A DNA stretch of 60,994 nucleotides, counting the filler, from Bipalium vagum (taxonomy: Eukaryota), in NCBI GenBank assembly GCA_037834085.1. It is 3 parts of 3 records of this genome, joined end to end, with 100 filler letters (N's around TTAATTAATTAA, not from the genome) between each part and the next. Parts side by side here need not be neighbours in the genome. Positions count along the whole stretch, not along the records: positions 19,383 to 37,509 come from JBBMKC010040095.1; 2 more parts are not named here. The stretch is one strand, 5' to 3'. The notes beneath the pieces are model-generated. The model was not told the DNA's origin and ran no database searches. It saw only the letters and a program-made list of their open reading frames with translations. Shown here piece by piece: positions 21,837 to 24,800 of the stretch. Every line of letters starts with the position of its first letter. Positions within the stretch are counted from its first letter, which is position 1. The translations under genes were made by a program, and so were the position numbers.

Positions 21837-24800
21837 AATCTTGTCACACGCTCGTCTGCGCTCTGATGCTACTCAACACGGATCTCCATGGAAATGTAAG
21901 TGTCATTGGCATTATGATTGTTATTCTGGATCAATCTTTATTTCATGTTAGAGTGTCAACAGAAAAATGAGCTGCGAGGACTTCGTTGTGAGCATGGCAG
22001 AATTGAATAACGGTGACAACTTCGACCGAGAGGAGCTGATCATGCTCTTCAATTCCATTCTGGAGAAACCGATAAGGTGGAATGTGTAAGTCAGATGTTT
22101 TGTAGGGGGTTTTCATTTTAACATTGCAACATACAAATATTCGATGGGGTTTTTGTTAGATAGGAAATAGTAGTGTAAGGAGTTTAGATAACAAATGAAT
22201 GGGGGACGTAGCTCAGCGGTAGAGCAGTCCATGCGCATGTGAAAGGTCCCGGGTTCGAATCCCGGTGTCTCCAATTTATTTGAACCTAACAAGTAGGAAG
22301 TAATTTTATATGGGAGGTTCCTTTAAAGAACTGAGGCTGATTAGATGAAAAAGGTGGGAAAGGTTTTGAGACTTTTGTATGAGAGTGACATATTTGGGCT
22401 TCTTTATCAAAAATCCATAGTAAATGGTAACTGAATTTTCAACTTTTGGAATGGTTGTAAAGTTGTGAAAGTTAAATTTTTGTTGAATAAAAATAAATTT
22501 AAAAAGTTAAATGTTTTATTTTATTGAAAACTGTAACCCTTTATTTTCCAGGGACAATGAGCTCATTGGTCTGTTCCAACCAAAAATCGATTACAGTGAC
22601 ATTAGCAAGCAGATCCATTCGAACCATTTGAACTTGTTTCTGGAGGTATTTGTTTACTCGTCATTTTCTGTTTGGTCATTGATCATTCTGCTATTTTTGA
22701 TAATCGATTTTGTGTTCGCTTGATGGCACAAGAATTGGAGAATATTATTTTTTGTTTATTATTATTATTTTATTAATATTTTTTCGTCATTATTATCATT
22801 ATTATTGTTTTTATTTATTATTATTTTTATNNNNNNNNNNNNNNNNNNNNNNNNNNNNNNNNNNNNNNNNNNNNNNNNNNNNNNNNNNNNNNNNNNNNNN
22901 NNNNNNNNNNNNNNNNNNNNNNNNNNNNNNNNNNNNNNNNNNNNNNNNNNNNNNNNNNNNNNNNNNNNNNNNNNNNNNNNNNNNNNNNNNNNNNNNNNNN
23001 NNTTTTTTCATGTTATTAATTATCGATTTTAATACATTTTTATTTACTTAAAATAATTATTTTTAGTTTGTAATTTATTTTATTATGAAAATAAGTTGAT
23101 GATTTTATTTTGAAATTTTCATTACTGTAAACATTTTCTTTGTTCGAAATGTAAACAAAATTTTTTTCCTATTAAGAATATTTTTTTTGCTTATATATAC
23201 TTTTAAAAAATATATTTTTATAATAAATTATTGATTTATTGAAAATAACAATTTTTATGTTCATGATTTATTCACTGGAAAAAATGTTGGTTTTTTATGA
23301 ATTTTTATAATATTTTGAATGGTGGCAAAATCAATGAAAATAAATTGTAATATTTCAGAATAATAGAATTTTGGAGTATTTTTAAGTAAAGGGAAATAGG
23401 TCTTTCTTTTGTTTTATTTTTTATAATTATTTTTTAAGAAACCAAAATTTATTAACTTATCTTCTAATAAATTTCTATTTTGTATTTATTATTTTAAATA
23501 TATTTTATTTATTTATTTTTTATCAAGTGCTTTTAAAATTTTTTTTAAAAATTTTTCCTATTTGTCAATAATATTATTATTTTTATTATATTATATTGTT
23601 ATAATAATAATATTATTCTAATATTACATTATTATTATTTATTAACCTTGTACTATTATATTATATATAAATATATGATATTCAAGTTGTGAAAATTTCT
23701 TCATTCGTGACAGTCGGATCTCTTCAAAAAGAACAAGAGAAATTACTCAGCAAAAGTGCACAGAAAAATTAATTTTTATTTGTCTACGACTGTGTGCTCA
23801 AAGTTCCTAGTAAACATTTCCATAAGGTTAACAGAATGGAAAGTGTCACTGTTGCAGGAAGCACTTTTCCTAACATGAATCATTGGAGGGACAACGAAAG
23901 CTTTTATAATTACGTTTGACTCAGCTAACGTTGGTGACAGTATTGGTTCAAAATATTCTCTTTAGTTAATATCTCATGATCTTCTGTATATATTATATAT
24001 ACAATGGCGATCGAAAACATTTTNNNNNNNNNNNNNNNNNNNNNNNNNNNNNNNNNNNNNNNNNNNNNNNNNNNNNNNNNNNNNNNNNNNNNNNNNNNNN
24101 NNNNNNNNNNNNNNNNNNNNNNNNNNNNNNNNNNNNNNNNNNNNNNNNNNNNNTCTGTTAAATTTAATTAACAAAGATTAACAAAAAAAAATATCTAAAA
24201 ATCGAAATTAAGAAAAAATATTCGGGAAAAATCACTTTGGATTAACGATTTAAATTTTTCCTCAGATTAAAAATGGATTTCTTTTTTTATAAAATTGACA
24301 AAATGATTTATTAATTTTATAAATTTGTTTGAGTTAAGTTAACCTTTTTCAAAATATCAAATTTTGTTTTAAATGTCAATCATGTAGGTAATATTTACAA
24401 AAAATAAATAAATTACGGCTATATTTACGTTTTTATTTCATTTTATTTAAACGTTGATGGTTATGATAAAAAAGAAAGACAATGAATTCGTTAAATGGCT
24501 GTTACGGTAGTGGAAAGGTTCTTGGGTCATAAAAAACTTAGATCAGTCCAGGAAAGAATATTTGGCAAGTAAAGTAAATGAAGAGGGTGTCCTCGTATTG
24601 GAGGAAAACGTACATTTTGCCGAGCTCGAGATTCATTTGTCTTTCCTCTTTGTACCAGAGAGACTTTAAGACAAAATAATTCTTGGTGTATCTACCTTTT
24701 CATTATAGTCTTTATTGAATATTACACATCTCAGGTCGTAGTATTGATTGAAGTGAACTTTGATAGATTTAATTATTAATGAGGCTGAAACTTGATGATG

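What the first reader, a model, noticed from the sequence alone, without database searches (positions are those of the whole stretch)
22174..22291. An apparent intronic tRNA-Ala gene is a solo LTR of a second subfamily of the same TRIM type
Seen: the tRNA-like sequence at 22202-22273 sits inside TGTAAGG...CCTAACA termini with a perfect 5-bp TSD AGTAG on both sides. The tRNA core, including its odd anticodon arm, matches the LTRs at 55003/55244, but the flanks (~28 bp 5', ~18 bp 3') differ. Inference: an independent integrase-mediated insertion followed by LTR-LTR recombination. The family has therefore diversified and seeds tRNA-like loci with intact A/B boxes, which would inflate tRNA-Ala annotations or be mistaken for SINEs. 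Two insertions in 61 kb suggest a high copy number.
Basis: partly seen in the sequence, partly recalled or inferred. Interest (0 to 1): 0.8.

Follow-up and report, generated by a model that had tools for sequence, protein, structure and literature searches.

The report
tRNA-like mobile element, probable solo LTR
The "tRNA-Ala gene" in this intron is not a working tRNA gene but one copy of a very abundant 118-base mobile element, most likely a lone LTR of a Helenus-type miniature retrotransposon, a kind first described in 2024.

Summary
Bases 22174-22291 (118 bp) run TGTAAGG...CCTAACA, sit between perfect AGTAG copies (22169-22173, 22292-22296), and hold a tRNA-like core at 22202-22273.

- **The core is a decayed tRNA-Ala(CGC).** It keeps G3:U70, the A box and the B box. 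It has G33 and only 2 of 5 anticodon-stem pairs.
- **It is a high-copy repeat.** Laying the one available run (assembled contigs) gives summed depth of about 20 in the flanks. Depth jumps to thousands exactly at 22174 and drops back exactly at 22291/22292. 1011 contig pieces match, 199 of them at 99% or better.
- **Sub-families exist.** Other copies share the odd anticodon arm but have a different 5' flank.

Size, TGT..ACA ends, tRNA position and short fixed duplication match LTRs of Helenus (Kojima 2024), which are TRIMs with tRNA-derived LTRs.

I could not show a full-length element (two LTRs, PBS, PPT) for this sub-family. "Solo LTR" therefore stays an inference, at about 0.6. MITE and SINE readings fit worse. 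The 5-bp duplication differs from the 4 bp of every published animal Helenus family with a determined TSD. The organism was not identified. No empty site could be tested.

The parts
22169..22173 (.). left copy of the target-site duplication, AGTAG
22174..22291 (+). 118-bp repeat unit, probable solo LTR of a Helenus-like TRIM; TGTAAGG...CCTAACA ends (6/7 inverted)
   Evidence: the depth step falls at both ends
22174..22201 (+). 28-bp 5' flank that belongs to the repeat (putative U3); it lies upstream of any start an internal Pol III promoter could give
   Evidence: depth rises from 22174 and another contig matches from 22176. The U3 role is inferred.
22202..22273 (+). tRNA-Ala(CGC)-derived pseudo-tRNA: acceptor 7/7 with G3:U70, D stem 4/4, T stem 5/5, anticodon stem 2/5, G33
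22209..22219 (+). A box, TAGCTCAGCGG
   Evidence: fits the conserved TRGCY..YGG pattern named in PMC10886601
22252..22262 (+). B box, GGTTCGAATCC
   Evidence: GGTTC is conserved in Helenus
22227..22243 (+). degenerate anticodon arm holding the 10-bp palindrome CATGCGCATG (22230-22239); shared by other genomic copies
   Evidence: loose-end consensus
22274..22291 (+). 18-bp 3' flank of the repeat (putative end of R plus U5), with the interrupted T run TTTATTT at 22275-22281
   Evidence: The R/U5 role is inferred.
22292..22296 (.). right copy of the target-site duplication, AGTAG
22086..22552 (+). host intron (GTAAGT...TTCCAG), 467 bp, or 344 bp without the element and one AGTAG; 29% G+C against 47% in the element
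21963..22085 (+). last Sec7-domain exon of the host gene (Sec7 plus PH_9, EFA6/PSD-like); exon start approximate
   Evidence: Sec7 E 1.6e-05, profile 144-183 of 183

Best explanation
Bases 22174-22291 are one copy of a high-copy, recently amplified, non-coding mobile element. Its middle is a decayed tRNA-Ala(CGC) that keeps the Pol III A and B boxes. Most likely it is a solo LTR of a Helenus-type TRIM ('TRIMp3').

Shown: an integrase-type insertion into AGTAG in a 344-bp intron of a Sec7/PH gene, leaving TG..CA ends and a 5-bp duplication, and membership of a repeat family whose limits are these ends.

Inferred: a full element (LTR, PBS, short internal part, PPT, LTR) was inserted by the integrase of an autonomous LTR retrotransposon, and the two LTRs then recombined.

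Inferred working model: Pol III starts at the tRNA-like +1, so 22174-22201 acts as U3. The tRNA-like stretch up to the weak, interrupted T run (TTTATTT, 22275-22281) acts as R. The last 10 bp or so act as U5. Reverse transcription restores U3 at the 5' end, which explains how 28 bp upstream of the promoter are copied. The 5-bp duplication points to a partner whose integrase makes 5-bp duplications, as the Copia families linked to fungal Helenus do, and away from the 4-bp Gypsy partners proposed for published animal Helenus.
For: - **Ends and duplication:**; chance 0.3-3%.
- **Repeat limits equal the TG..CA limits:** depth goes from 32 to 6155 at 22170-22177, and from 7721 to 76 after 22297. 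59 contigs diverge behind 22291/22292 into unlike AT-rich flanks (agreement 0.43-0.5). A second contig matches from 22176. 1011 pieces were laid, 199 at 99% or better and 218 at 95-99%.
- **Not a working tRNA:** anticodon stem 2/5, G33, no isotype from ARAGORN. Other copies carry the same odd arm (loose-end consensus), so they descend from a master element.
- **The 28-bp leader is part of the repeat**. This needs LTR-style or DNA-level copying.
- **Architecture equals that of short Helenus LTRs:** 104-323 bp long, TGT..ACA ends, tRNA-like part about 30 nt from the 5' end and about 20-25 nt from the 3' end, a T-rich run after it, 4- or 5-bp TSD, frequent solo LTRs.
Against: - No second LTR, PBS or PPT was seen for this sub-family. 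The piece holds a single copy.
- The best-supported loose ends behind the 3' end show no conserved PBS-like consensus, so most copies are solitary.
- All published animal Helenus families with a determined TSD make 4-bp, not 5-bp, duplications.
- The element's signature motifs are absent from the published Helenus consensus file.
- The ends are also a short inverted repeat, and a second inverted pair brackets the tRNA core, which a DNA transposon could also explain.
- There is no RNA evidence.
Confidence: 0.6

Rival explanations
1. A miniature inverted-repeat DNA transposon (MITE) that carries a tRNA-derived core. It would be moved by a DDE transposase of the integrase-like kind, which also gives TGT..ACA ends and short fixed duplications (Ginger/TDD-like).
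For: The ends are 6/7 inverted (TGTAAGG / TGTTAGG). A second inverted pair, CAAATGAAT / ATTTATTTG, brackets the core. The 118-bp size and the mostly solitary copies with unlike flanks fit a MITE. Ginger ends follow TGTNR, and TDD-4/5 make 5-bp TSDs.
Against: Ginger TIRs are 40-270 bp. Metazoan Ginger elements make 4-bp TSDs at CCGG or RTATAY-type targets. Here the inverted end is 7 bp and the target is AGTAG. The whole element does not fold better than shuffles (z -0.67). No transposase relative was found in the piece.
Confidence: 0.15
2. A tRNA-Ala-derived SINE: transcribed by Pol III and copied by a LINE's machinery.
For: It has a tRNA-derived head with intact A and B boxes, is short, non-coding and very abundant. 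51 contigs lose likeness right after the T-rich run at 22281, where a Pol III transcript might end.
Against: 28 conserved bases lie upstream of the tRNA start, so the element begins 35 nt before the A box, further than an internal promoter can start. There is no A-rich or simple-repeat tail and no LINE-like 3' part. The ends are exact TG..CA with an exact 5-bp duplication.
Confidence: 0.1
3. A genuine or recently decayed nuclear tRNA-Ala gene that happens to lie in an intron, with the flanking repeats arising by chance.
For: Rfam tRNA score of 48 bits against a cut-off of 29, with a perfect acceptor, D and T arms, G3:U70 and anticodon CGC.
Against: The anticodon stem is broken (2/5) and position 33 is G. 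About a thousand contig pieces match, and the likeness extends 28 nt upstream and 18 nt downstream, stopping at the TG..CA ends. The chance of such flanks is 0.3-3%.
Confidence: 0.02

Closest known systems
Helenus (TRIMp3): TRIMs with tRNA-derived LTRs, Kojima 2024, PMC10886601
   Same: An LTR-sized unit (published range 104-323 bp; here 118). TGT..ACA ends. A tRNA-like part in mid-LTR with conserved A and B boxes but a non-functional tRNA. A short fixed TSD, many solo LTRs, several sub-families per genome, hundreds to thousands of copies, and inflation of tRNA predictions, including tRNA-Ala in rust fungi.
   Different: No full-length copy with PBS and PPT was seen here. The TSD is 5 bp, as in fungal and plant Helenus, whereas every published animal family with a determined TSD gives 4 bp. 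The host gene and introns here look metazoan, but the organism is unidentified. The sequence motifs are not in the published consensus set. The core derives from tRNA-Ala(CGC).
Cassandra (plant TRIM with 5S rRNA in its LTRs) and Ajax (nemertean TRIM with a 5S promoter)
   Same: The same idea: a Pol III small-RNA promoter carried inside the LTRs of a miniature LTR retrotransposon, with a 5-bp TSD.
   Different: The module there is 5S-derived, not tRNA-derived. The hosts are plants or nemerteans.
tRNA-derived SINEs (SINE2)
   Same: A tRNA-derived head with A and B boxes; short, abundant and non-coding. Kojima proposes that Helenus arose when such a SINE landed in a TRIM LTR.
   Different: SINEs start at the Pol III start site, carry a LINE-related 3' part or tail, and have variable TSDs. 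This element has a 28-bp leader, TG..CA ends, no tail and an exact 5-bp TSD.
Ginger / TDD DNA transposons and their non-autonomous copies (PMC2836005)
   Same: TGTNR ends and 4-5-bp TSDs made by an integrase-like transposase.
   Different: Their TIRs are 40-270 bp and their targets are specific (CCGG, RTATAY). Here the inverted end is only 7 bp and the target is AGTAG.

Membership tests
Helenus / TRIMp3 | tRNA-derived sequence inside the LTR, with A box (TRGCY..YGG) and B box (GGTTC) conserved | tested here: met
   TAGCTCAGCGG at 22209-22219 and GGTTCGAATCC at 22252-22262; Rfam tRNA 48.1 bits
Helenus / TRIMp3 | LTR ends TG..CA (TGT..ACA) and a fixed short TSD of 4 or 5 bp | tested here: met
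   TGTAAGG...CCTAACA with AGTAG/AGTAG. The ends coincide with the limits of the repeat.
Helenus / TRIMp3 | Two LTRs in direct orientation around a short non-coding internal part | not testable with these tools
   Only one copy lies in the 18-kb piece. The single run is kept as contigs that break inside the repeat. Public collections held no copy.
Helenus / TRIMp3 | PBS complementary to a tRNA just after the 5' LTR, and a PPT just before the 3' LTR | not testable with these tools
   A solo copy has neither. The loose ends shown behind 22291/22292 have no conserved consensus, which neither proves nor excludes full-length copies.
Helenus / TRIMp3 | Interspersed repeat family with many copies, often as solo LTRs | tested here: met
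   1011 contig pieces were laid. Summed depth is up to about 9000 times the flank depth in the core and a few hundred to 1500 times at the ends (rough figures, since the tool warns this is not a copy number).
Animal Helenus as published | 4-bp TSD (Gypsy-type partner) | tested here: not met
   The TSD here is 5 bp. Table S1 lists 4 bp for every animal family with a determined TSD. Whether the host is an animal was not proven.
SINE2 | Element starts at the Pol III start and has a 3' tail (A-rich or simple repeat) or a LINE-derived end | tested here: not met
   A 28-bp conserved leader and no tail; the 3' end is ...GAACCTAACA
Ginger-type MITE | Long TIRs (40-270 bp) and a 4-bp TSD at specific targets (5 bp in TDD-4/5) | tested here: not met
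   The inverted end is 7 bp (6/7) and the target is AGTAG
Functional tRNA-Ala gene | Intact cloverleaf with U33 and a 5-bp anticodon stem | tested here: not met
   Anticodon stem 2/5 and G33. ARAGORN assigns no isotype.

The most novel reading that the evidence does not exclude
This would be an animal lineage of Pol III-promoter TRIMs (Helenus-like) that arose independently from a tRNA-Ala(CGC) module. It would use an integrase that makes 5-bp duplications (Copia- or BEL-type partner), unlike every published animal Helenus with a determined TSD (4 bp, Gypsy). It would have amplified to thousands of near-identical copies, so most tRNA-Ala predictions in this genome would be LTRs. In this reading the tRNA-like stretch itself serves as the R region, ended by a leaky TTTATTT terminator.
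Probability: 0.3. Interest if true: 0.5.

Novelty: new member of a known kind. Interest (0 to 1): 0.35.

Why it matters
Practically, tRNA scanners and Rfam call this locus a tRNA (48 bits), and the genome holds on the order of thousands of such cores. tRNA-Ala counts for this organism would therefore be grossly inflated unless the family is masked. The element would also be mislabelled as a SINE.

Biologically, it would add a host lineage and a 5-bp-TSD type to the recently defined TRIMp3/Helenus group. It would also give a young, abundant family (many copies at 99% or better) in which to test two open points about Helenus: whether a Pol III promoter in an LTR really drives retrotransposition, and which autonomous element supplies the proteins.

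Tried and rejected
1. **Copies in public collections.** An exact 19-mer of the odd anticodon arm gave 27 metagenome and 6 bacterial-genome hits and no viral hit. All share only 19-21 nt and lie in about 40% G+C gut-bacterial contigs (Ruminococcus/Agathobacter-like), so they are chance matches. They were dropped and none was taken for human DNA.
2. **Fishing for other copies through the antisense ORF** that spans the element. The word search found nothing.
3. **Finding the organism and orthologous introns for an empty-site test.** Exons were searched one by one by reference.
   - The 219-aa ORF is not on record.
   - The PH-exon word search found nothing.
   - The whole-library search with exon 30307-30588 gave 10 weak hits, at most 63% identity over about 40 aa.
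   - The one hit that could be located sits on a 909-bp soil metagenome contig. Another was not on record.
   - So no relative's locus was obtained, there is no empty-site test, and the organism stays coded.
5. **More copies or weak tRNA-like relics in the piece:** none.
6. **RNA evidence:** no RNA run is listed.
7. **The published Helenus consensus file** does not contain the element's signature motifs. Line breaks in that file could hide a match.
8. **No empty allele in the run.** No contig of the run joins the two flanks without the element (no joints). Contigs show presence only, so this says little.

Full report
**What is there.** The piece (19383-37509) is about 25% G+C. It carries, on the + strand, a multi-exon gene with a Sec7 domain and a PH_9 domain, so it is EFA6/PSD-like. 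The last Sec7 exon ends at 22085. The next exon starts at 22553. The intron between them runs GTAAGT...TTCCAG.

Inside this intron:
- AGTAG lies at 22169-22173.
- TGTAAGG lies at 22174-22180.
- A 72-nt tRNA-like sequence lies at 22202-22273.
- CCTAACA lies at 22285-22291.
- AGTAG lies again at 22292-22296.

The element has 47% G+C and the rest of the intron 29%.

**Is it more than chance?** I placed random 72-nt cores in the same piece. A TG..CA pair with a flanking 5-bp duplication within 60 nt turns up in 3.2% of trials. If the terminal 7-mers must also be 6/7 inverted, it turns up in 0.34%.

The only public run that holds this stretch is kept as assembled contigs and is probably the source sample. 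I laid it on 22114-22353 at 80% likeness or better.
- Summed contig depth is 19.6 up to 22161 and 32 in bin 22162-22169.
- It is 6155 in bin 22170-22177 and then climbs to about 185,000 at 22250-22257.
- It falls to 7721 in bin 22290-22297, then to 76, then to about 24.
- 1011 contig pieces were laid: 199 at 99% or better, 218 at 95-99%.
- 59 contigs lose all likeness just behind 22291/22292 and run on into unlike AT-rich sequence (consensus agreement 0.43-0.5).
- Another contig matches from 22176.
- The locus's own flank contigs stop inside the element (at 22220, and from 22266), as de Bruijn contigs do at repeats.

So 22174-22291 is a unit of a high-copy interspersed repeat, and its limits are the TG..CA ends. 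Dividing by the flank depth gives a few hundred to about 1500 copies that reach these ends, and several thousand copies of the core. The tool warns that this sum is not a copy number, so I use it only for order of magnitude.

**The tRNA-like core**.
- Acceptor stem 7/7, including G3:U70, which is the alanine identity pair by established knowledge.
- D stem 4/4 and T stem 5/5.
- Anticodon position CGC (Ala).
- Position 33 is G, and the anticodon stem pairs at only 2 of 5 positions.
- ARAGORN gives no isotype. Rfam still scores it as a tRNA at 48.1 bits against a cut-off of 29.
- The A box (TAGCTCAGCGG, 22209-22219) and the B box (GGTTCGAATCC, 22252-22262) are intact.

The odd arm contains the palindrome CATGCGCATG. 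Other genomic copies carry the same arm: the loose-end consensus is ...GAGCAGTCCATGCGCATGTG. The defect is therefore inherited from a master copy and is not local decay.

123 contigs show a variant with GGGGATG, one extra base in the D loop and a different upstream flank (AAATTAGTTG). Several long contigs of that type still end their likeness at 22292/22293.

**What kind of element?** Three facts narrow it down.
1. The ends are exact TG..CA with a 5-bp duplication, which is the mark of an integrase-type DDE enzyme.
2. 28 conserved bases lie upstream of the tRNA start, so the element begins 35 nt before the A box. That is too far for an internal Pol III promoter to transcribe, by established knowledge of type-2 promoters. 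A simple Pol III transcript copied by a LINE (a SINE) cannot carry this leader. The element also has no tail.
3. The inverted ends are only 7 bp long.

LTR-style replication explains all three, because U3 is restored from the 3' LTR.

The literature holds exactly this kind. [quoted passage not shown] Its published features are:
- LTRs of 104-323 bp.
- TGT...ACA ends, with the tRNA-like part about 30 nt from the 5' end and a T-rich run after it. Examples are the 128-bp Helenus-2C_CGi LTR and the 119-bp Helenus-10_PTrit LTR.
- Frequent solo LTRs with TSDs.
- Several families per genome, and hundreds to thousands of copies.
- Strong inflation of predicted tRNA genes, tRNA-Ala among them.

The 118-bp unit here has the same architecture.

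**Rivals.** A Ginger/TDD-type MITE would also give TGTNR ends and a 4-5-bp TSD. But Ginger TIRs are 40-270 bp, and metazoan Ginger elements make 4-bp TSDs at specific targets. The whole element does not fold unusually well. A second inverted pair (22192-22200 / 22274-22282) that brackets the core, and the dominance of solitary copies, keep this rival alive. The SINE and true-gene readings are weak for the reasons above.

**What I could not show.**
- No second LTR, PBS or PPT was found. The piece has one copy.
- Public collections held none.
- The antisense-ORF search found nothing.
- The best-supported loose ends behind the 3' end show no PBS-like consensus.
- The organism stayed unidentified, and no orthologous intron could be fetched, so the empty-site test was not done. 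Exons were searched singly by reference, and the joined spliced protein was deliberately not built.
- No RNA run is listed.

**Mechanism.** The steps below are inferred except where marked as shown. A full element was integrated at AGTAG by the integrase of an autonomous LTR retrotransposon (the duplication and ends are shown). LTR-LTR recombination then left the solo LTR. In active copies Pol III would start at the tRNA-like +1, so 22174-22201 acts as U3. The tRNA-like stretch would serve as R, ended by the weak interrupted T run TTTATTT (22275-22281). That run must be read through in the 5' LTR. The last 10 bp or so would be U5. At this solo copy the first run of four T downstream is at 22304-22307, so any local Pol III product would be about 105 nt.

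The 5-bp TSD differs from the 4 bp of every published animal Helenus family with a determined TSD, and matches the Copia-linked fungal families. If the host is an animal, as the EFA6-like gene with long AT-rich introns suggests, the partner is probably not the Gypsy type proposed for animal Helenus.

**Verdict.** The kind is known since 2024. This is a new member of it, possibly a 5-bp-TSD animal variant.

Noticed in passing
window 22275-22281: 51 contigs of the run lose likeness exactly behind 22281, the end of the interrupted T run TTTATTT that follows the tRNA-like 3' end. This could be a sub-family boundary, or copies made from Pol III transcripts that stopped there. It is unexplained.
   Followed up: no
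window 22192-22200 and 22274-22282: An inverted pair, CAAATGAAT / ATTTATTTG (8/9 with one G:U), brackets the tRNA-like core and extends its acceptor stem in the predicted fold. It is a leader-trailer pairing like that of a pre-tRNA, or a remnant of how the tRNA module entered the LTR.
   Followed up: partly
window 22230-22239: The degenerate anticodon arm holds a perfect 10-bp palindrome, CATGCGCATG, which is conserved in other copies.
   Followed up: partly
window 22242, 22250, 22252: Variant positions across copies: one base of the A run is missing at 22242 in about a quarter of the summed depth, C>T at 22250 in about 5%, and G>A at 22252 in about 1%. These are sub-family markers in the variable arm and T stem.
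   Followed up: no
window 19384-19443, 25352-25369, 37441-37509: (ATT)n microsatellites. Two of them form the two ends of the piece, so the piece was probably cut at, or the assembly broke at, simple repeats.
   Followed up: no
window 22831-23002 and 24024-24153: Two runs of N (172 and 130 bases) lie in the introns downstream of the element.
   Followed up: no
window 21776-33980: The host gene is EFA6/PSD-like: Sec7 exons up to 22085, PH_9 exons at about 28014-28097, 30305-30587 and from 30639, and a long serine/asparagine-rich last open frame at 33279-33977. It spans more than 12 kb. The whole-library search found no close relative of exon 30307-30588 among 1.84 billion representatives.
   Followed up: partly
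L001-L033: A 19-20-nt stretch of the anticodon arm is identical to a site in a gut Lachnospiraceae-type gene that recurs in many gut metagenome contigs. This is a chance match and not the element.
   Followed up: yes
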